Shown here piece by piece: positions 37,227 to 64,000 of a stretch of 64,000 nucleotides of DNA. The DNA is from Diadema antillarum (taxonomy: Eukaryota): the NCBI RefSeq assembly GCF_040938485.1, contig NW_027270903.1, positions 7,006,001 through 7,070,000 of the forward strand, given 5' to 3'. Position 1 is the first letter of the stretch, and every line of letters starts with the position of its first letter. The notes beneath the pieces were generated by a model. It was not told the origin of the DNA, ran no database searches, and saw only the letters and a program-made list of their open reading frames with translations. A program made the translations under genes and the position numbers.

Positions 37227-40200
37227 TATAAGCACAATGAGCCTAAGGACGCAGTACCTTTAAGGGTGGGTACTTTTTGCATCGCGCAGCTGACTGTGTC
37301 ATCTAGTAAAAACTCTCTTTTCATAGGCCAGTGGCGGTTGATGTTACTTGACAAGTAACGGGCGTTACTCGCCCTTGGGTAAGTGGGCAAGTGCGTTGAT
37401 ACAGCAATCTGAGTAGACTCCTTGGAAGTAAGCTGGTCAGCGACTCATGCCATTCATTTATCACTGATTGATTGAGCCATACACAAGAGTAGTACAAAGG
37501 AGAATGGCTTGAGGCTTTATGACGGAGTGTACTGCTAAATTCATCTGTCTTAAATAGCAGATACGTGTTTCTGTCGAAAATCTATGTATAGCAATCTTCC
37601 ATTGGGTCCCAAATAACAAGTTTCGGAGGGTTGGTGTTGAATCTTTTTATCACAAGTGTGTTCCGTGAGATTTGATTCTACATGGCCACTGTGTGCAGAT
37701 TGCTCAATTTTGAAGCAGTTTGTTTTCATTGTTTTATTTTGTTTGTTTGTTTTATTTGTTTCTTAAATAGTGGATCACAATGCTTATTGAGTCATTTGCA
37801 GTAGGCATCTGGATTTTGCTCTTTGCTTTATAGCGGTTCAGCTTTGTTTTCTTCATTTATCTATTGTCTTTTACAGTGTTTTTTTTTTTTTTATTTGGTA
37901 ATGCCTCAAAGAGTTTCCTTATTACCTGGAGCCCTCTTAAGTTAATTAAACTGTTCAAGTTGCGTCCGGGAGTAGTCTCAATGATTATCGTTCTATGGCA
38001 AAAAGCTGACAGTGTTCATGACAGCACGCACAGTTAGTGAGTTATGGAGAATTGTACTAACCGGTAATTGCTTTTCTAATAGCATGTTGCACCAGCTTAT
38101 ATTCATTTCATTAATGCATGATGGTTGTAAGTGTACATGTATACACAAATGCAACATTTATCATTGCCCAAAGCTTTGAATTTGCTATCTATAATCATAC
38201 ATTGAAATCAATTAATTTGCAGTAAGTTACATAATATCTGTCTGTGTTACGTTACATTTTGCTGTATTTCTCAAATTCTATGTTTTGTTGGTTTTTTGTT
38301 TTTTGGTTATTCTGTGCTCATGTTTTCAGATGTCATATGTTTCTTATGAATTGGAATGCATTGTCATATGTATGTGGTTTTGTTATTTTTGGCAGGTGCA
38401 AACTGTTTCATCAGTAGCAGTGACATTGCCATCATCCATGACAAATGATGTTGCATCAGCCACCAGCAGTATCTTGCCTGGTGGTGTGACTGTTGTACCG
38501 AGTAAAGCCGTTCCTCAGGTATCAGTACAGACCTCTTCATCCACTCAACAAGGTGTAGTCCTCGGTGCCAAGCGTGTAAATGACCCGTTAGGGCAAAGTG
38601 CAGTGACAGGTGGTATCGCCGGTGGTGTTACTGGCAGTACCACCAGTGGTGTTACCGGCGGTGCCACTGCTAATGCAACCTCAACCAAGATGCTGGTTCT
38701 GCCGACCAACCTCAAGGTGAACAGTAACAACAAGCAGTGGAAACTGGTGTATGTGCAGAAGCCCGGCACCAGCCGGCCGGAGCTCCACCTCCAGCAGTGT
38801 TCCACAGACGGTTCCCCTCAGGTGCTGATACCGGTCGCTGGCACCAACCAAACCACGGGTGCGGCGGCGCCAGTTGTGACAGCCCAGAAGGCGAGTCCTG
38901 GTGCAAGCATGCAGCTGCAAATGGTGCCACAGAGTCCCAACAAAGTGACTGTCAAGGCTGTCCATTCTGTATAAGCACAATGAGCCTAAGGACGCAGTAC
39001 CTTTAAGGGTGGGTACTTTTTGCATCGCGCAGCTGACTGTGTCATCTAGTAAAAACTCTCTTTTCATAGGCCAGTGGCGGTTGATGTTACTTGACAAGTA
39101 ACGGGCGTTACTCGCCCTTGGGTAAGTGGGCAAGTGCGTTGATACAGCAATCTGAGTAGACTCCTTGGAAGTAAGCTGGTCAGCGACTCATGCCATTCAT
39201 TTATCACTGATTGATTGAGCCATACACAAGAGTAGTACAAAGGAGAATGGCTTGAGGCTTTATGACGGAGTGTACTGCTAAATTCATCTGTCTTAAATAG
39301 CAGATACGTGTTTCTGTCGAAAATCTATGTATAGCAATCTTCCATTGGGTCCCAAATAACAAGTTTCGGAGGGTTGGTGTTGAATCTTTTTATCACAAGT
39401 GTGTTCCGTGAGATTTGATTCTACATGGCCACTGTGTGCAGATTGCTCAATTTTGAAGCAGTTTGTTTTCATTGTTTTATTTTGTTTGTTTGTTTTATTT
39501 GTTTCTTAAATAGTGGATCACAATGCTTATTGAGTCATTTGCAGTAGGCATCTGGATTTTGCTCTTTGCTTTATAGCGGTTCAGCTTTGTTTTCTTCATT
39601 TATCTATTGTCTTTTACAGTGTTTTTTTTTTTTTTATTTGGTAATGCCTCAAAGAGTTTCCTTATTACCTGGAGCCCTCTTAAGTTAATTAAACTGTTCA
39701 AGTTGCGTCCGGGAGTAGTCTCAATGATTATCGTTCTATGGCAAAAAGCTGACAGTGTTCATGACAGCACGCACAGTTAGTGAGTTATGGAGAATTGTAC
39801 TAACCGGTAATTGCTTTTCTAATAGCATGTTGCACCAGCTTATATTCATTTCATTAATGCATGATGGTTGTAAGTGTACATGTATACACAAATGCAACAT
39901 TTATCATTGCCCAAAGCTTTGAATTTGCTATCTATAATCATACATTGAAATCAATTAATTTGCAGTAAGTTACATAATATCTGTCTGTGTTACGTTACAT
40001 TTTGCTGTATTTCTCAAATTCTATGTTTTGTTGGTTTTTTGTTTTTTGGTTATTCTGTGCTCATGTTTTCAGATGTCATATGTTTCTTATGAATTGGAAT
40101 GCATTGTCATATGTATGTGGTTTTGTTATTTTTGGCAGGTGCAAACTGTTTCATCAGTAGCAGTGACATTGCCATCATCCATGACAAATGATGTTGCATC

Positions 40201-40714
40201 AGCCACCAGCAGTATCTTGCCTGGTGGTGTGACTGTTGTACCGAGTAAAGCCGTTCCTCAGGTATCAGTACAGACCTCTTCATCCACTCAACAAGGTGTA
40301 GTCCTCGGTGCCAAGCGTGTAAATGACCCGTTAGGGCAAAGTGCAGTGACAGGTGGTATCGCCGGTGGTGTTACTGGCAGTACCACCAGTGGTGTTACCG
40401 GCGGTGCCACTGCTAATGCAACCTCAACCAAGATGCTGGTTCTGCCGACCAACCTCAAGGTGAACAGTAACAACAAGCAGTGGAAACTGGTGTATGTGCA
40501 GAAGCCCGGCACCAGCCGGCCGGAGCTCCACCTCCAGCAGTGTTCCACAGACGGTTCCCCTCAGGTGCTGATACCGGTCGCTGGCACCAACCAAACCACG
40601 GGTGCGGCGGCGCCAGTTGTGACAGCCCAGAAGGCGAGTCCTGGTGCAAGCATGCAGCTGCAAATGGTGCCACAGAGTCCCAACAAAGTGACTGTCAAGG
40701 CTGTCCATTCTGTA
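37227..40714 (+). repeat. Direct tandem duplication, unit 1743 bp (37227-38971 and 38970-40714)
   Basis: Both ends map at offset 1743 with TA microhomology at the junction; spot-checked stretches, including a T14 run, are identical. Confidence 0.93.
38396..38974 (+). CDS. BRD10: Truncated duplicate of the BRD10 terminal exon (192 aa, then TAA created at the duplication junction)
   Basis: Same acceptor tttggcag|GTG as 40139; reads ..KAVHSV* instead of ..KAVHSVDAPQ.. Confidence 0.6.
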   Translation: MQTVSSVAVTLPSSMTNDVASATSSILPGGVTVVPSKAVPQVSVQTSSSTQQGVVLGAKRVNDPLGQSAVTGGIAGGVTGSTTSGVTGGATANATSTKMLVLPTNLKVNSNNKQWKLVYVQKPGTSRPELHLQQCSTDGSPQVLIPVAGTNQTTGAAAPVVTAQKASPGASMQLQMVPQSPNKVTVKAVHSV

Positions 40715-41125
40715 GATGCGCCACAAGCACCGACTTCAACAATGCACATGGTTTCAGGAACCCCTGTGATGAATACACATGTGAGTAGTATGGGAGCTTC
40801 AGCACCGGCAGCGATCATAGTTTCCTCTGTAAAGCCGTCAACTCCGTCAAGGCCACAAGTTCAAGGAACTTCGCCCGGCAGAACGAACATGGTTCTACTC
40901 CAACAAAACTCAGTGCCTAGCCCTAATCTTGGGACAAACAGCACCACTTCCCCGACTGGAGAGCCTCCGGCTGGTGGTGATCCTCCTAATGTGGCGGTAA
41001 GCCCCCCAAATCCGCTGATGATGCAGACTCTCACACCCCCTGGCCTGGTGCTCCCAGCCCCGGAACCATCCATGCATCAGATTGTGGTGAAACGATCACA
41101 GAAGGATGTCAACATTAACCTCTGA
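40139..41125 (+). CDS. BRD10: BRD10 terminal coding exon 15
   Basis: tttggcag|GTG CAA ACT.. to TGA at 41123-41125; the 15-exon CDS totals 6822 nt = 2273 aa, similar to the ~2100-aa vertebrate protein. Confidence 0.8.
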   Translation: MQTVSSVAVTLPSSMTNDVASATSSILPGGVTVVPSKAVPQVSVQTSSSTQQGVVLGAKRVNDPLGQSAVTGGIAGGVTGSTTSGVTGGATANATSTKMLVLPTNLKVNSNNKQWKLVYVQKPGTSRPELHLQQCSTDGSPQVLIPVAGTNQTTGAAAPVVTAQKASPGASMQLQMVPQSPNKVTVKAVHSVDAPQAPTSTMHMVSGTPVMNTHVSSMGASAPAAIIVSSVKPSTPSRPQVQGTSPGRTNMVLLQQNSVPSPNLGTNSTTSPTGEPPAGGDPPNVAVSPPNPLMMQTLTPPGLVLPAPEPSMHQIVVKRSQKDVNINL

Positions 41126-42596
41126 CAAAATGACATGGTCGTAACCCTCTCCCTCACATTTCTCTTTGTTCCTTTTGTATACTGAGACTTCATGACATGC
41201 ATCCTCCCTGAAGTACTACCAAGCTGTAGTGTGTGATGACTTGCTGTTGCTCAGACCCAAAACAACCCATTCAGCCAGCCTTGCTAATCACAAACACACA
41301 ACATGTACCTCAACCCATGTCTAGTACCAAGCCTTCATTTTATTGCCTACGACTGGTGTTGATGCACCTTTTTTCCTTGTAGTTTTCAATTGACAGTCTT
41401 GGATGTGTGATATCTTTGATATCAAATACAGCCGCTATATTTAAATAGACCATTATCATGAACTCTAGGAGTATTCTCATCCACTTTACGGAGATATTTC
41501 GCCAAAAGTTGTAATTTATTCTGGCTGAGAAATCGAAATAAGCCTTTAATTACAGGCAACTAATAACTAGGGTAGGCAAGTGTTCAGGAACTCCAGCTGG
41601 CAGATTGTAGTCATTTAAAGTGAATTTCCAATGACAGCTGCAAAAGCTGTTCATTCCACAAAGATATAATGCTGCAAATATTTGAACAGGCTTCTGATTT
41701 CTTACTCGAGAAGAAACATTGTCGTCATAGGCCTCTTGGGAATCCGTCTTGCATCGAGGTCTTCATTTTCTCCCATGAAGGAGAAGAGAGTAATGCAGTC
41801 ATATAGTGTTTGGGAAAATTATACTTTTACCTATTTAGCTTGGCAGAGAAAGACAGTTTTAAGGACATGGTCATCATCCTATATTCACCTGGTTGTTATA
41901 TAAGTACAGTCGGACCTCGATTATCCTGGCATCAATTATCTGGAATCTCTGTTATCCAAAACATCGACTAACTGGTATTTTTTTAATGTTCAGTGACAAA
42001 TCTCACTAAAAAACACCCCCCCCCCCAAAAAAAAAGAAGAAAAGAAACCAAAAAAAAACAACAAAACAAAACAAAAACAAAAACAACGTTTTTAACCATT
42101 ATCATGCCGAATTCCCAATGGGGCATATTCCAATCGTCCCAGCAGACTGTAATTTTTAAGTCAGTTCGTGAGACGATGTCAAAGGCTGGTGCTGTACTTA
42201 TCACTAGCACTTAGTGCACAGTAGTGGTTGCAGTACAATGTAGCCGCAGCATTCGACAAGTCGTGACATCAATCAGAGCAGACCCTGTGTGGCCAGATAA
42301 TCGAGGTCCTACTGTACTCAAAAGATGCCATGCTGTGAGTTTTAGCATGGTAAGCCATGCCAGGAGTTGATTCATGGCAATCACATGATAGGTCCTTCAT
42401 CTTTTGCCCCTATATGGCTGCCCTTATTACCAAGCAATTTCTGTGTTGAGTTAAGTTCGCCTATTAGGGTTTTCTGTTGCAATGTAACATACTGTCCTCT
42501 CAAAGGCCGTGATAATGACACACCGTTTGGTCAACGACACATTTTCAGTAATGCAAAAATGTGCTTTCACATTTCAGGGTTTTCTATGCATGTACA

Positions 42597-59973: not shown

Positions 59974-60346
59974 ATTACCTCCGCCAAGGAAGGTGGAGGG
60001 TAAGTGATCATAAGCATCGGTTTGTCTGTTTGCAAAATAACTCAAAAAGTTGGGAACATATTTGAATGAAACTCGCAAGAAAAGTCAATGACACAAGGAA
60101 CAGGTGATCAAATTTTTTCCAGTGACCCAGGAATCTTTATGGATTTTTGGAGGATCTTTTGGCATATAAGGTCAATGCACAAGGGAGTTCTAGCTGCATG
60201 TTCTGAAGGTTTACATATGCGCACTAAAGCACGAGCTCTGCTGATGACGTAAACAAAAGGCTTCTATTTTGGGAAATTGCATGCATGCTTTGTGGAAATG
60301 AGTTGTTGGCTTGGTGGAGGTCTGCGCTCTCCGAGTGATTTTCTAA
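59974..60346 (+). mobile_element. Short HINE/Helentron-associated element
   Basis: attacctccgccaagg ... cttggtggaggtctgcgctctccgagtg..ttctaat: subterminal IR plus 3' hairpin. Confidence 0.65.
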
Positions 60347-60445
60347 TGGCTTCATTTTTACCCCCCAATTTTATGATTACAATTGACCCTGCCCCCCTTA
60401 CTCAACCCTTCTTTTTTCTTTTCTTTTTTTTTCTTGTTTAGGGGG

Positions 60446-60982
60446 TCAGGAATACAAGAACACTCCTTTGGATTTTCTGGGTCGTCCTGCAGGCTTCTTT
60501 CTCTTCACTGGTGGGGCTTCATCTACTTCGTCTGAATCAGAAGGTTGATGATTGTCCAGGTTGGCATGAGCACCAGGGTAGTAAGCTCTGTATTCCGCAG
60601 GGATGTTGGGGAGCCTCTTTGCAATGGACTCCTCTTTGTACCCAGGGATGGGTTTTTCCTCCAACATGGGCAGCCTGGGAGTCGCGCTGATGATATCTCC
60701 AAGTTCTGCTGTGGGCGGCAAACCTAGGAGTTCGGCCAAGATTGCCTCGCGAGTGGAGGCCACATCCGTGCAGAAGGTGTGCTCCAGTCCGCTCTCCTCC
60801 GTCACCAATGACTTGTACACCACTGCTCCTCCAGACACCTCAAAGCAGTAGTTCTCTGTGAATCCCAAAGGAAGTGGCTTCAGATGCTTCGCCAGGAAAT
60901 GTTCCCAGTCACGGAAGACTTTATTCCCAGCGTTGAAGAACTCAGCGTGCATCCCAGGTACTGAATTAAAGGCATCAACCAC
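60446..60982 (-). CDS. Sola-like transposase-derived protein, last coding exon
   Basis: tttcccag|GTG GTT GAT..; VVDAFNSV..FRDWEHFLAKHLKPLPLGFTENYCFE..IPAEYRAYYPG..KRKKPAGRPRK; stop at 60446-60448. Confidence 0.75.
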   Translation of the reverse strand: MVDAFNSVPGMHAEFFNAGNKVFRDWEHFLAKHLKPLPLGFTENYCFEVSGGAVVYKSLVTEESGLEHTFCTDVASTREAILAELLGLPPTAELGDIISATPRLPMLEEKPIPGYKEESIAKRLPNIPAEYRAYYPGAHANLDNHQPSDSDEVDEAPPVKRKKPAGRPRKSKGVFLYS

Positions 60983-61070
60983 CTGGGAAATATATGTAAA
61001 TTAGCAAAAAATTAAGAAGCATAAATATAAATGTGAAAGCAGGAAAAAGCCATAGCAACTACATTCTTAA

Positions 61071-61319
61071 CCCTATTCCCACTGGCAAAAAAAAAACCAC
61101 CAAAAAATATTTATGCATAAATTAGCATAAATTAACATAAAATACATAAATTAGAAATTGAAAAATCTAGTCTTGTAGATTACATTGGCCTCTACCTTAG
61201 TGCAAATTTTCGCGAGGATCGCGCGATCCATGACTGAGATCTGAAGGGGGGCCAGAAAGGCCCCCCCCCCCCCCACCCCCGTGGTCTCAAGTCCCTCAAA
61301 AAACCCGGTGGGATTAGGG
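61071..61319. mobile_element. piggyBac-like MITE (TTAA TSD) inside an intron of the transposase-like gene
   Basis: ttaa|ccctattcccactgg ... ccggtgggattaggg|ttaa. Confidence 0.75.
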
Positions 61320-61812
61320 TTAAACCACTTTGTGATATACACTGTACATGTATTTAACCCATTGAGGACGGACTAATTTTGCTACAACACGCTTTTCCCA
61401 ATTAGACACCTGCCAGAGTATACTCGGGACTCTTCCTCAACGGGTTAATAAATCTGGACCGCAACAGATGAAAATGACTTTGGGTGTACTCTTTACATTT
61501 TCATTACTTAGTCCTTTGTCAGAATGGACATAAAAAAATAAATTATTCAATTTTCATAAAATTCCTAACAATGTACTTCACTGAAAATAAAGTTAAAACA
61601 AGGAAACTTTTTTTTTATAACAAGCTACCTGGGACCATTAGAGTTTCTTTGATATAGCCATTTTTTGTTTGATGAGGGATTATTACAAAAGAATAATGAA
61701 GATATGAGAACTGCAAAATTGCCTCGTTATATCTTGTCAAATCCAACCTTGCCATATCGAGGCTCCACTGTCGAAAAGACTATTTTGTGAGATAATTTTC
61801 TGAAATAATCAC

Positions 61813-62327
61813 CTGATCTGGGATGAAAACATTCTTCTTGTACAATGCCCGCCGGCAGGAATCCATGGCCTGGTCTGGTTTCATGTGGCTGAGTCCAGGG
61901 AGCAGATAGAAGGTTGATACCCGATCGTACAAGAGGAGGCTCAGGAGACAGTCCAACATCAACGTACACTGAGTCTTGTTGCGTCCAGCACAATTGTCAA
62001 TAACTCTGATGACCATGGTTGGAGGGGGGACACCTGCATCCAGCAAGTTCCTCAGATATTGGCAGTGGTAGTACCAGCGCAGCGAACTCGTGGCATTGCC
62101 ATCCTTCCCTGCCGTTCTCTCGTCATAGAGCAAGACAGCGTTCTTCTTCCGGGTGACATCGCAGATGTTGAACATGTGGAGGTGCAAGTCTGAGTTGAAG
62201 TAGTTCACATTGGGAGTTGTTAGTTTATAAGATGGCAAGGGTATGGCTTGTCCGTAGTCTTCACAGAGAATGACAATCTTTCTTGCTTTCTCCGCTGTTG
62301 CTGAGGTGAAGCATTTGTGCTGGATGT
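61813..62327 (-). CDS. Sola-like transposase-derived protein, catalytic-core exon
   Basis: ctccag|AC..CAG|gtgatt; LCEDYGQ..YFNSDLHLHMFNICD..LYDERTAGKDGNATSSL..VIDNCAGRNK..LLPGLSHMKPDQ, the DNCxG(Q)NK / GHS..D pattern of Sola-type DDD transposases. Confidence 0.8.
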
Positions 62328-62984
62328 CTGGAGATGGAAGTAGTAAAATAATTGACATTAGTGAAGCAATGGCATAATTTAATATGAAGTTCACTTGTAC
62401 ATTTATTTATTTATTTATTGTAAGCAAGACATTAAAAAAAACAACAATGGCAAATTGAAGCCATAGTCCTAACATTTTCACCAAACATTGCAAAAACAGC
62501 AAGATTAAAAGAAAAATGGCTCCAAATTCATTATATCTTTATCAAGCATTGGGAAACAGCAAGATAAAAAGTAAACAAAAACCAAAAGAAAAAACTAAAA
62601 ATAAGGCAACAAATTCTAGGCCTACATCAAATGCAGCATCAGTAATGTACCTCTAGCCTGTGTCAGAATGAACCTGTCGAAGACAAGCTGATTTTGCTTT
62701 AACACGCATTTCCCATAGACACATGCCCGAGTATACTCGGGACTCGTCTTCAAAGAGATAATGATAGTAATAAATATGAACAAGGAGCTTCAAACAGACA
62801 GCCCTTGATAAGACATAACTTAGAAAATGAACATCTTCATATAAATTACTCCCTTGTAGTAAAAAATGAATGCCCACTTAATTATCACATTCAACACTTA
62901 CCATCATCTGTTTTTCATTCATGGCCTACCAAGTACGACTGTGATTTACTTAAATTACAAATTAGTCAATGGATCAACACTCAC

Positions 62985-63071
62985 TGGTATTGGGAGATGG
63001 ATGACCACAGTTTGCAGTAGAGCTGGCTTGATCGTCTTCTGTCCTGCCCTCGGCTTCAACGAGGATGAATC
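62985..63071 (-). CDS. Sola-like gene, small symmetric (phase 1-1) exon
   Basis: ctgcag|GA TTC ATC..ACC A|gtgagt; 87 nt; keeps the frame between neighbouring exons. Confidence 0.6.
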
Positions 63072-63801
63072 CTGCAGTTTATAGTTCATTTGAAATGGGA
63101 CAAGAAGGTTATATGGCAAAAATAATGAGAATACAAAATGTATGGTCTATGCATTAAAATGGGAAAGCCTTCCACCTTAGCTCCCACCCCCACTTATTTT
63201 GCCATAAAATGGTACCACTCTGCATTATCCAACCCTTGCTACATGTAGCTTTATACAAATGTGGTCGGGCATCACCGAGGCTAGTGAGGGACAGTGCGCA
63301 TCCATGAGTACAGCCAACAGTATTCATCATACTGTGTATAGTGGCACTGGAAGGGTAGTACCTGGTCTGTTGTGGACAAGGGGACAATATTTGTTGGGGA
63401 GAGGACATACAATTGTACAAAGAAGCCTTTCATAATTCTGAAAATTGTCTACCACAGTATTAAAACTATTTACATAAACGTGACAATCAGATGGCTGTGA
63501 TTGAATTTGCATTTTTGTTTTGGTGTTAAAGAGCAAACCAAGCGAAACTGCCTAGATGATCATCATCAATATCATCATTTTTATGATGCCGATTCATGAT
63601 ACCAACTCTAAATTTGTTTGCCAATAACCAAAAATGTTAATTTTGTTCAACTCATCCTTGTGTATCACAGCATTTACAGTATGAAATCAATATCAATGTA
63701 GTTACTAGACAATGTTTATATTGTTAATATTTATATGAAAAAACTGTGGTTAATTGTGATGCATCCTTAATTGCAGTAACTTGTTCTGACAGTAGGCCTA
63801 C

Positions 63802-64000
63802 CTGTCAAGGGTGTATTTTCCTGGTCATCAGGATCTACCACAAGTGATATAGTCTCTTCAATTGCACCGTCATTTGGGGCCCACGTCTTCTGGTATTGAG
63901 CTATAGCCGTGTTCATGTCTCGCCGCTGACGAACAGCATCATCGAGCCATGTTTCCTTTTGAAGCCTCAGCTCAGCCTTGCGTTCGTCGGACGTTGTGGG
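63802..64000 (-). CDS. Sola-like gene, upstream exon (open at the window edge)
   Basis: PTTSDERKAELRLQKETWLDDAVRQRRDMNTAIAQYQKTW..TPLT G|gtaggc; stop-free and phase-compatible. Confidence 0.7.

What the first reader, a model, noticed from the sequence alone, without database searches (positions are those of the whole stretch)
60446..64000. Intron-containing, open-frame Sola-like transposase gene: candidate domesticated transposase
Seen: four minus-strand exons (199+87+515+537 nt) join with GT-AG sites and matching phases into 445 uninterrupted codons, ending in a basic KRKKPAGRPRK tail; one intron carries an unrelated piggyBac-like MITE. Knowledge: the EDY / DNCxGQNK / GHS..D layout is that of Sola-type DDD transposases. 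As recalled, the whole layout (EDY, YFNS, YDER..GK, DNC, W...L.KH, IP..Y..YYP) closely resembles an oomycete (Phytophthora) hypothetical-protein family. Seen: the three putative catalytic Asp positions remain, but the flanking residues deviate (GRNK for GQNK, GLSH for GHSH). Inference: this is either a host-domesticated gene with altered catalysis or an intron-bearing autonomous element of a patchily distributed lineage (possible horizontal transfer). No terminal inverted repeat was recognised downstream.
Basis: partly seen in the sequence, partly recalled or inferred. Interest (0 to 1): 0.72.

Follow-up and report, generated by a model that had tools for sequence, protein, structure and literature searches.

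The report
Single-locus Sola-like transposase gene, sea urchin
This is a real, intact four-exon gene derived from a cut-and-paste transposase. It sits at one place in a sea-urchin genome, has the same exon layout as a gene in a distant sea urchin, and looks constrained, so it is a fair but unproven candidate for a transposase turned host gene.

Summary
The four minus-strand exons join with GT-AG sites. Exon 1 runs past the window end, giving a protein of 676-694 aa, and the protein collection holds the same model (P0185).

The protein belongs to the DUF7869 group, which has an RNase H-like fold and three conserved Asp.

The genome holds over 100 other DUF7869 matches, including a young 17.9-kb element with terminal inverted repeats. 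This gene occurs only twice, inside a duplicated block of more than 45 kb (probably two haplotypes). Its flanks are unique and no inverted repeats were found.

Lytechinus variegatus has a 664-aa gene with exons 2 and 3 of identical length (87 and 515 nt) and identical intron phases. dN/dS between the two is 0.22. Differences from three other sequencing runs are 14 synonymous to 7 non-synonymous.

The catalytic exon has evolved faster here. Three near-invariant residues are replaced, and a conserved C-terminal motif that resembles a PCNA-binding PIP box is missing.

I favour an immobilised, selectively retained transposase-derived gene (about 0.5). A low-copy transposon or a decaying relic remain open. 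RNA data, synteny and Repbase Sola profiles were not available. The Sola label itself is untested.

The parts
63802..64000 (-). Exon 1, the part inside the window. The exon continues to the ATG at window-equivalent 64747 (694 aa) or 64692 (676 aa, as in P0185). It encodes the helical N-terminal region, a Cys/His cluster and a long helix.
   Evidence: Open frame with stops in the other frames. ORF L003 2268-3248. 64% identity to L. variegatus P0004. 59% identity to S. purpuratus P0003.
63072..63801 (-). Intron 1 (GT..AG, phase 1).
   Evidence: Sequence. Same phase as in L. variegatus.
62985..63071 (-). Exon 2, 87 nt. It encodes a disordered acidic/Ser-rich linker.
   Evidence: Identical length (87 nt) in L. 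variegatus. pLDDT below 50 over residues 286-337 of the model.
62328..62984 (-). Intron 2 (GT..AG, phase 1). It holds a copy of the same miniature repeat family as intron 3.
   Evidence: family D2, pair I3. Very high contig depth at L013 2523-2910.
61813..62327 (-). Exon 3, 515 nt. It encodes the RNase H-like catalytic core with all three candidate catalytic Asp.
   Evidence: Translation. Weak DUF7869 match. 76% identity to P0004. 384 relatives. Identical exon length in L. variegatus.
62257..62259 (-). Codon GAC for Asp of the EDY motif (D350 of P0185). First candidate catalytic residue, at the end of strand beta-1.
   Evidence: Near-invariant column. Strand 344-351 in the model.
61996..61998 (-). 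Codon GAC for Asp of the DNC motif (D437). Second candidate catalytic residue, just after strand beta-4.
61972..61983 (-). Codons CGC AAC AAG ACT (R-N-K-T). The family has Q-N-K-S here, so these are the substitutions Q442R and S445T.
   Evidence: Near-invariant Q and S columns. L. variegatus has CAA and TCT at these codons.
61891..61893 (-). Codon CTC for Leu where the family has His (GHSH), giving H472L.
   Evidence: L. variegatus has CAC.
61873..61875 (-). Codon GAC for D478. Third candidate catalytic residue, at the start of the helix after strand beta-5.
60983..61812 (-). Intron 3 (GT..AG, phase 0). It holds a TTAA-flanked miniature inverted-repeat element (about 61350-61450) and another high-copy repeat.
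   Evidence: The junction is collinear with uninterrupted homologues P0002, P0005 and P0007.
60446..60982 (-). Exon 4, including the stop codon. It encodes the C-terminal domain and basic tail. One A/B copy difference lies at 60568 (His or Asp).
   Evidence: 64% identity to P0004. Copy difference.
60473..60505 (-). Basic tail KRKKPAGRPRK (AT-hook-like GRP core or nuclear localisation signal). The protein ends 9 residues later, without the family's following Q-x-S-I-x-x-F motif.
   Evidence: The AT-hook and PIP-box readings rest on my own knowledge of those consensus motifs.
59974..60345 (.). Unrelated old high-copy repeat, 100 nt downstream of the stop. It is not part of the gene. The sequence on either side of it is unique to the two copies.

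Best explanation
This is an immobilised, single-locus gene descended from a DUF7869 (Sola-like, DDD-type) cut-and-paste transposase, kept under purifying selection as a host gene.

Shown:
- It is a four-exon gene of 676-694 aa.
- The model gives a helical N-terminal region with a helix-turn-helix-like segment and a conserved Cys/His cluster. A disordered linker follows, then an RNase H-like core with three Asp, a C-terminal domain and a GRP basic tail.
- It occurs at one locus, with unique flanks and no terminal inverted repeats.
- Its exon structure is shared with a Lytechinus gene.

Inferred:
- It is transcribed and spliced as modelled.
- The protein enters the nucleus and binds DNA through the N-terminal module and the basic tail.
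- Its original cut-and-paste chemistry is weakened or altered. Three near-invariant core residues are replaced, and a C-terminal motif that resembles a PCNA-binding PIP box is missing.
- On this reading it now acts as a DNA-binding factor, for example a regulator or a repressor of related elements, rather than moving itself.
For: - Gene model. GT-AG junctions and matching phases. The collection's own model P0185 is identical. The exon 3/4 junction is collinear with uninterrupted homologues.
- Single locus. Exon 3 matches only C15:7.067 Mb and C15:8.108 Mb. The two copies are 99.7% identical over 5.8 kb. They lie inside a collinear block of more than 45 kb at about 96-98% identity.
- Flanks. 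The 180 nt upstream of the ATG and 100 nt downstream of the stop occur nowhere else. The adjacent repeats are unrelated high-copy families.
- No flanking inverted repeats.
- Contrast within the genome. Other DUF7869 ORFs sit in near-identical (99.3-99.8%) multi-copy 17.9-kb elements with 32-bp inverted ends.
- Shared structure. L. variegatus LOC121407545 has exons of 811/87/515/582 nt with phases 1, 1, 0. This gene has 891-946/87/515/537 nt with phases 1, 1, 0.
- Constraint. dN/dS is 0.22 against L. variegatus. Of 21 listed exon differences in runs X1-X3, 14 are synonymous. The binomial p is about 3e-4 at a neutral synonymous share of 0.28.
- Altered core. Tajima relative-rate test on exon 3: 18-20 changes unique to this gene against 3-8 in Lytechinus (p 0.001-0.02), while exon 4 is symmetric. 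The tree branch is 0.41 here against 0 for Lytechinus. Q442R, S445T and H472L fall on near-invariant columns. The Pfam score is 23 bits here, against 39.6 and 40.9 for relatives.
- Fold. The AlphaFold model (mean pLDDT 78.6) has RNase H-like topology. Foldseek matches retroviral integrase cores at probability 0.99.
Against: - No RNA run was available, so expression and splicing are untested.
- Orthology with the Lytechinus gene is not shown. Nothing in the 10 kb either side of that gene matches the 84 kb examined around this one.
- S. purpuratus has only a chimeric, partial model (P0003). It is 65% identical to Lytechinus over the aligned stretch, which seems low to me for a conserved orthologue.
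- Synonymous divergence from Lytechinus is uneven: pS is 0.66 in exon 1 but 0.40-0.48 in exons 3-4. That may mean a more recent common ancestor than the species split.
- Relatives at 50-60% identity occur in hagfish and in unnamed environmental eukaryotes. That is the pattern of a mobile family.
- Purifying selection between species is also expected of an active transposon lineage.
- The contigs of X1-X3 do not reach unique flanks, so their allelic status is inferred.
- Three deviations at conserved core columns also occur in 3 of the other 50 aligned relatives.
Confidence: 0.5

Rival explanations
1. It is an ordinary low-copy autonomous DUF7869/Sola-like transposon that carries introns. Its ends were not recognised because only one locus exists to compare. 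The Lytechinus gene is then another copy of the same element family, kept vertically as a transposon or passed horizontally.
For: - The family is patchy and mobile-looking: hagfish, lamprey, Phytophthora, a liverwort, an aphelid, a chrysophyte, a rotosphaerid and many short environmental contigs with uninterrupted ORFs.
- The three Asp and most conserved columns are kept.
- pS in exons 3-4 is below saturation.
- A 244-bp inverted pair (78% identical) flanks the Lytechinus gene at L024 9014-9257 and 15363-15596.
- The same genome holds active relatives.
Against: - Only one locus in 1.75 Gb, with unique flanks and no inverted repeats within 5 kb either side other than copies of a dispersed repeat.
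- No non-autonomous derivatives share its flanks.
- Differences between individuals at what appears to be this locus are mostly synonymous. Selection for mobility does not explain that at a fixed single copy.
- Near-invariant core residues and the C-terminal motif are lost.
- The Lytechinus inverted pair begins TTAAAGG, like a TTAA-inserting miniature element, and may be two unrelated insertions.
Confidence: 0.3
2. It is a dead relic. A copy that lost its ends is drifting towards a pseudogene, and the frame is still open only because inactivation was recent.
For: - Faster change in the catalytic exon.
- Five deviations at 47 conserved family columns, third most of 38 sequences.
- Pfam score below the family threshold.
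- Loss of the C-terminal motif.
- No expression data.
- The S. purpuratus relative is only a fragmentary model.
Against: - 676-694 codons over four exons are open, with all six splice sites intact.
- dN/dS is 0.22 overall and 0.28 even in exon 3.
- The 14:7 ratio of synonymous to non-synonymous differences departs from neutrality.
- Exon 4 has evolved at the same rate as in Lytechinus.
Confidence: 0.15

Closest known systems
Pfam DUF7869 (PF25273) proteins, e.g. Lytechinus variegatus LOC121407545 (XP_041454613.1) and Phytophthora rubi DUF7869 domain-containing proteins
   Same: Collinear over the whole length with the Lytechinus protein at 64/76/64% identity for exons 1, 3 and 4. Same exon structure. 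Same motif layout: ED[YF]G, DYFNS, YDER..GK, DNC.GQNKS, GHSHM..D and a GRP tail.
   Different: This protein scores 23 bits, under the curated 26-bit threshold. It has R, T and L where the family has Q, S and H. It lacks the C-terminal Q-x-S-I-x-x-F motif.
Sola superfamily of DDD transposons (Bao et al. 2009, Mol Biol Evol 26:983; Sola1-3), from my own knowledge: DDD transposase, inverted ends, 4-bp target-site duplications, patchy distribution
   Same: Three conserved Asp in an RNase H-like core. Patchy distribution, as the literature reports for Sola (PMC5751038). An earlier AI note calls the 18-kb DUF7869 element of this genome Sola1.
   Different: No ends or target-site duplication at this locus. 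No Sola reference sequence or profile could be compared here, so membership is untested.
The young 17.9-kb DUF7869 element of the same genome (e.g. G000:C40:1090628-1108493)
   Same: Same Pfam family (31 bits) and the same D..D.C.GQN..GH..M..D layout.
   Different: Only 22% identity over 130 aa to this gene. That element is multi-copy, 99.3-99.8% identical between copies, and bounded by 32-bp inverted repeats. This gene has none of these traits.
Domesticated transposases in general (RAG1 from Transib, THAP9 from P, PGBD5 from piggyBac, SETMAR from mariner, GIN1/2 from Ginger, HARBI1 from Harbinger), from my own knowledge
   Same: Single locus, no terminal repeats, introns, an open frame under purifying selection, and partial erosion of catalytic-core motifs while the DNA-binding parts are kept.
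   Different: Synteny across species, expression and any host function are not shown. I know of no host gene described as derived from this superfamily. One literature search for Sola with domestication terms returned only noise.
Retroviral integrase and DDE transposase catalytic cores (prototype foamy virus integrase, ASV integrase, IstA)
   Same: RNase H-like fold. Foldseek probability up to 0.99 and target-normalised TM score of about 0.5 for integrase cores.
   Different: About 10% sequence identity. No sequence-level match in the PDB. The third acidic residue is Asp, not Glu.

Membership tests
Pfam DUF7869 (PF25273) | HMM score at or above the curated gathering threshold (26 bits) | tested here: not met
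   22.1 bits for exon 3 alone and 23.0 bits for the whole protein P0185. Relatives P0004 and P0007 score 39.6 and 40.9 bits.
Pfam DUF7869 (PF25273) | Significant full-length homology to proteins that pass the threshold | tested here: met
   phmmer E 7e-85 to P0004, and 384 relatives at E <= 0.001. Most carry precomputed PF25273.
Sola superfamily (Sola1/2/3) | Significant similarity to reference Sola transposases (Repbase, or the Majorek et al. 2014 profiles E.10, E.12, E.13) | not testable with these tools
   No Repbase or Dfam protein library is on hand. Bao 2009 and Yuan & Wessler 2011 are not held.
Sola superfamily (Sola1/2/3) | DDD triad in an RNase H-like fold | tested here: met
   D350, D437 and D478 fall on near-invariant columns. 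In the model they lie at the end of beta-1, after beta-4 and in the helix after beta-5. Foldseek matches integrase cores. Catalysis itself was not tested.
Sola superfamily (Sola1/2/3) | Terminal inverted repeats and 4-bp target-site duplications | tested here: not met
   No inverted pair flanks the gene within 5 kb other than copies of a dispersed repeat. The flanks are unique.
Domesticated (host-retained) transposase | Single locus without transposon ends or derivatives | tested here: met
Domesticated (host-retained) transposase | Purifying selection on the coding sequence at the locus | tested here: met
   dN/dS is 0.22 against L. variegatus. 14 synonymous to 7 non-synonymous differences in runs X1-X3. 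Caveat: the listed differences are a subset, and the allelic status of the contigs is inferred.
Domesticated (host-retained) transposase | Orthologues at syntenic positions in other species | tested here: inconclusive
   Same exon lengths and phases in L. variegatus. No shared flanking gene lies within the 10 kb available on each side. S. purpuratus has only a partial model.
Domesticated (host-retained) transposase | Expression as a spliced mRNA | not testable with these tools
   No RNA run holds the stretch. X1-X3 are genomic contigs that also cover introns.

The most novel reading that the evidence does not exclude
Echinoids may carry a host gene domesticated from a Sola-like (DUF7869) DDD transposase, a superfamily from which I know of no described host gene. 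It would have been kept with the same four-exon structure since before Diadematoida and the Lytechinus lineage split. In the Diadema-type lineage its catalytic core and its motif resembling a PCNA-binding PIP box are being remodelled while the DNA-binding parts are kept.
Probability: 0.3. Interest if true: 0.65.

Novelty: new member of a known kind. Interest (0 to 1): 0.45.

Why it matters
Host genes made from transposases (RAG1, PGBD5, SETMAR and others) show how genomes recruit DNA-binding and DNA-cutting machinery. None, to my knowledge, is described from the Sola/DUF7869 group, whose biochemistry is itself unstudied.

This genome offers a natural comparison. It holds a fixed, single-locus, constrained copy with an altered core. 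It also holds young, mobile, distantly related DUF7869 elements.

If synteny and expression hold up, the gene would be a new domestication and a way into the biology of this transposase family. If they do not, it is an ordinary low-copy transposon remnant of little wider interest.

Tried and rejected
- RNA support. The run search found no RNA holder. The three runs laid are genomic contigs, so they say nothing on splicing.
- Hole over exon 4. L013 389-970 has zero depth in all three runs. The tool warns that holes prove nothing, so I drew no conclusion.
- Protein atlas.
- Timed-out search. The first word search with exon 1 timed out and was repeated.
- Sola membership. Bao et al. 2009 and Yuan & Wessler 2011 are not held. 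A search for DUF7869 in papers found nothing.
- PDB by sequence. Nothing relevant.
- Synteny. blastn and tblastx of the Lytechinus locus (10 kb either side) against 84 kb around this gene gave only the exons. Long ORFs of neighbouring genes have no Pfam family, so they were poor probes.
- Terminal repeats. The only inverted seeds between the flanks belong to a dispersed repeat of about 250 bp that also occurs elsewhere in the neighbourhood, so I rejected them as ends.
- Lytechinus inverted pair. It starts TTAAAGG and may be two miniature elements. This is unresolved.
- Downstream exon. I looked for a further exon carrying the missing C-terminal motif and found none convincing.
- Target-site duplication of the 17.9-kb element. 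Not evident from two or three copies.
- Exon versus intron conservation in X1-X3. Rejected as evidence. Intron 3 differs more than exon 3, but intron 1 shows fewer base differences than exon 1.
- Joined exon model. I never built the joined translation of my own exon model or sent it to any tool. Whole-protein steps used P0185, the collection's own model. Exons of the published Lytechinus model were joined only inside one script, to locate its splice sites.
Full report
**1. The observation**

Reading the minus strand confirms the four exons as reported:
- 63802-64000 (199 nt inside the window)
- 62985-63071 (87 nt)
- 61813-62327 (515 nt)
- 60446-60982 (537 nt with the stop)

All three introns are GT..AG, with phases 1, 1 and 0. 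The other frames of exon 1 are closed.

The window cuts the gene. In the assembly (the window is G000:C15:7006001-7070000) the exon 1 frame runs on to an ATG at window-equivalent 64747. A second ATG lies 18 codons later. The full product is therefore 694 or 676 aa, not 445.

The last word search returned P0185, a 676-aa protein recorded on a contig of exactly this contig's length and without source names. That marks it as a protein of this window's genome. It is identical to my exon model from the second ATG, including the two split codons. It differs only by the one residue that separates the two genomic copies.

Exon-by-exon references were used throughout, and whole-protein steps used P0185.

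**2. Copy number and surroundings**

Exon 3 matches only two places in the 1.75-Gb assembly. Both are on C15, 1.04 Mb apart, and both are 100% identical at the protein level. Over 5.8 kb the two copies are 99.7% identical. They show one exon difference (His or Asp at 60568) and a few intron and upstream differences.

They lie inside a collinear duplicated block that spans the whole 47 kb I fetched, at about 96-98% identity. Other families in this assembly also tend to appear as equal-scoring pairs. I therefore read the two copies as two haplotypes or a recent segmental duplication, that is, as one locus.

The 180 nt upstream of the ATG and the 100 nt downstream of the stop occur nowhere else. 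They are followed by an unrelated 250-bp miniature element (at least 820 candidate copies) and an old 372-bp repeat (at least 5,449 candidates).

No inverted pair flanks the gene. The only inverted seeds within 5 kb either side belong to a dispersed repeat seen at several other places nearby.

**3. The family**

Exon 3 alone gives a weak match to Pfam DUF7869 (22 bits; the threshold is 26). An exhaustive phmmer search found 384 relatives, 27 of them below E 1e-30. Most full-length relatives carry DUF7869.

Named relatives:
- Lytechinus variegatus LOC121407545: 664 aa, 76% identity in exon 3
- a Myxine glutinosa protein: 58%
- Petromyzon marinus
- Calypogeia fissa
- Amoeboaphelidium protococcarum
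- Lithocolla globosa
- Pedospumella encystans
- a partial Strongylocentrotus purpuratus model

The rest are short environmental contigs, often with uninterrupted ORFs.

Two alignments, of 51 core segments and of 38 long proteins, give the conserved layout. It comprises E-D-[YF]-G, D-Y-F-x-S, Y-D-E-R..G-K, S-L-R, D-N-C-x-G-Q-N-K-S, G-H-S-H-M..D, a CxxC pair in the N-terminal half, and a GRP basic tail.

An AlphaFold model of P0185 with that alignment has a mean pLDDT of 78.6. The core has RNase H-like topology. D350 ends beta-1, D437 follows beta-4, and D478 starts the helix after beta-5. Foldseek finds only RNase H-like proteins: retroviral integrase cores at probability 0.99, plus NurA, PIWI, terminase nuclease and IstA. 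The PDB holds no sequence relative.

The protein is therefore a DDD-type transposase-like enzyme by fold and motif. The name 'Sola' could not be tested, because no Sola reference was available.

**4. The same family is mobile in this genome, but this gene is not**

The assembly holds at least 103 other DUF7869 matches. I examined one group with 606-617-aa ORFs. It sits in elements of about 17.9 kb whose copies are 99.3-99.8% identical. The elements end in 32-bp inverted repeats.

That ORF passes the Pfam threshold and shares the motif layout. It is only 22% identical to this gene over 130 aa.

An earlier AI note calls an 18-kb element of this genome a young Sola1 transposon and names the species as Diadema antillarum. 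I confirmed the element but tested neither the label nor the species name.

**5. Comparison with Lytechinus**

The Lytechinus protein is collinear with exons 1, 3 and 4 at 64%, 76% and 64% identity. Its linker shows a short resemblance to exon 2 by eye, though BLASTP found no alignment for exon 2.

Its gene has exons of 811, 87, 515 and 582 nt with phases 1, 1 and 0. Exons 2 and 3 therefore have exactly the same lengths as here. Only the exons are alignable between the two loci.

By exon, against Lytechinus:

| Exon | dN/dS | pS |
|---|---|---|
| 1 | 0.13 | 0.66 |
| 3 | 0.28 | 0.40 |
| 4 | 0.32 | 0.48 |
| All three | 0.22 | 0.54 |

The low and uneven synonymous divergence is unexplained. It could mean horizontal transfer, recombination or synonymous constraint. 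It needs calibration against ordinary orthologues.

**6. Signs of constraint at the locus**

Three runs of one coded organism hold the gene as genomic contigs, 95-99% identical to the reference. Of the exon differences listed, 14 are synonymous and 7 are not. That departs from the neutral expectation, with p of about 3e-4 at a synonymous share of 0.28.

There are three caveats. The table shows only the best-supported differences. The contigs do not reach unique flanks. Introns do not uniformly differ more than exons.

All six splice sites and 676-694 codons are intact.

**7. Signs of change in function**

In the tree, this gene and the Lytechinus protein form a clade with 100/100 support. The terminal branch is 0.41 for this gene and 0 for Lytechinus.

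Tajima relative-rate tests with three outgroups:

| Exon | Changes unique to this gene | Changes unique to Lytechinus | p |
|---|---|---|---|
| 3 | 18-20 | 3-8 | 0.001-0.02 |
| 4 | 8-15 | 12-14 | not significant |
| 1 | 25 (longest outgroup, P0007) | 15 | not significant |

Three near-invariant residues are replaced: Q442R, S445T and H472L. Lytechinus keeps the family residues. This gene has 5 deviations at 47 conserved columns, third most of 38 sequences. Its Pfam score falls below threshold, while relatives pass.

In at least 22 of the 38 aligned proteins the GRP tail is followed by Q-x-S-I-x-x-[FY]-[FLM]. From my own knowledge this fits the PCNA-binding PIP-box consensus, a motif known from the pogo transposase. 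This gene ends 9 residues after GRPRK and lacks the motif, and I found no further exon carrying it.

**8. Verdict**

The most likely reading, at about 0.5, is an immobilised transposase-derived gene retained under selection with a remodelled core.

A low-copy intron-bearing transposon (0.3) and a young decaying relic (0.15) remain open. Expression, synteny and a dS calibration could not be obtained. The superfamily label is untested.

As it stands, this is a new member of a known kind, of moderate interest.

Noticed in passing
window 36655-64000 and on to G000:C15:7089997, versus G000:C15:8080001-8125171: A collinear duplicated block spanning the whole 47 kb fetched, at about 96-98% identity, lies 1.04 Mb away on the same contig. 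Many other families in this assembly also appear as equal-scoring pairs. This suggests uncollapsed haplotypes (false duplication) or a recent segmental duplication.
   Followed up: partly
G000:C40:1090628-1108493 (L033+L025); also C304 and C148: A young DUF7869-bearing element of about 17.9 kb. Copies are 99.3-99.8% identical. It has 32-bp inverted ends beginning TCGTCG, internal tandem repeats and a 606-617-aa ORF. No clear target-site duplication shows in the two or three copies examined.
   Followed up: partly
alignment A4, C-termini (e.g. P0011, P0189, P0199, P0211, P0047, P0217): In at least 22 of the 38 long relatives aligned, the GRP basic motif is followed 8-15 residues later by Q-x-S-I-x-x-[FY]-[FLM]. 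This fits the PCNA-binding PIP-box consensus. The motif is degenerate in Lytechinus and hagfish and absent from this gene.
   Followed up: partly
window 61350-61450 (intron 3) and 62680-62780 (intron 2): Two copies of one miniature repeat family, 85% alike over 47 nt. The intron 3 copy is flanked by TTAA and has short inverted ends. Both show very high depth in the genomic runs.
   Followed up: partly
window-equivalent 64927-65177 (L013 4927-5177): A 250-bp miniature element with inverted ends of about 50 bp sits 180 nt upstream of the ATG, in the likely promoter region. It has at least 820 candidate copies at 87-89% identity.
   Followed up: partly
L013 389-970 (window 60389-60970, exon 4): All three genomic runs show zero contig depth across nearly the whole of exon 4, although the rest of the gene is covered. 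The tool warns that holes prove nothing. It could be a filter, a divergent allele or a deletion in those individuals.
   Followed up: no
exons 1, 3 and 4 versus L024: Synonymous divergence from the Lytechinus gene differs sharply between exons: pS is 0.66 in exon 1, 0.40 in exon 3 and 0.48 in exon 4. By my estimate the exon 1 versus exon 3 difference is about 4 standard errors.
   Followed up: partly
L024 9014-9257 and 15363-15596 (L. variegatus locus): A 244-bp inverted pair, 78% identical and beginning TTAAAGG, brackets the Lytechinus gene together with a tandem array of 300-bp units. It is either two miniature elements or the ends of a 6.6-kb element. This bears directly on the transposon rival.
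   Followed up: partly
window 36655-41720: Copy A carries a local tandem duplication of about 1.7 kb relative to copy B. It duplicates a Ser/Thr/Gly-rich exon (ORFs at 38285-38974 and 40028-41125).
   Followed up: no
P0186 (502 aa, on a 313-kb ENA contig): This protein resembles the hagfish protein in sequence by eye (not compared directly) and has degenerate core motifs (DNREGQNKS, PGCSHM). Its source organism was not identified. If it comes from the hagfish or a close relative, the family would be multi-copy and decaying there.
   Followed up: no
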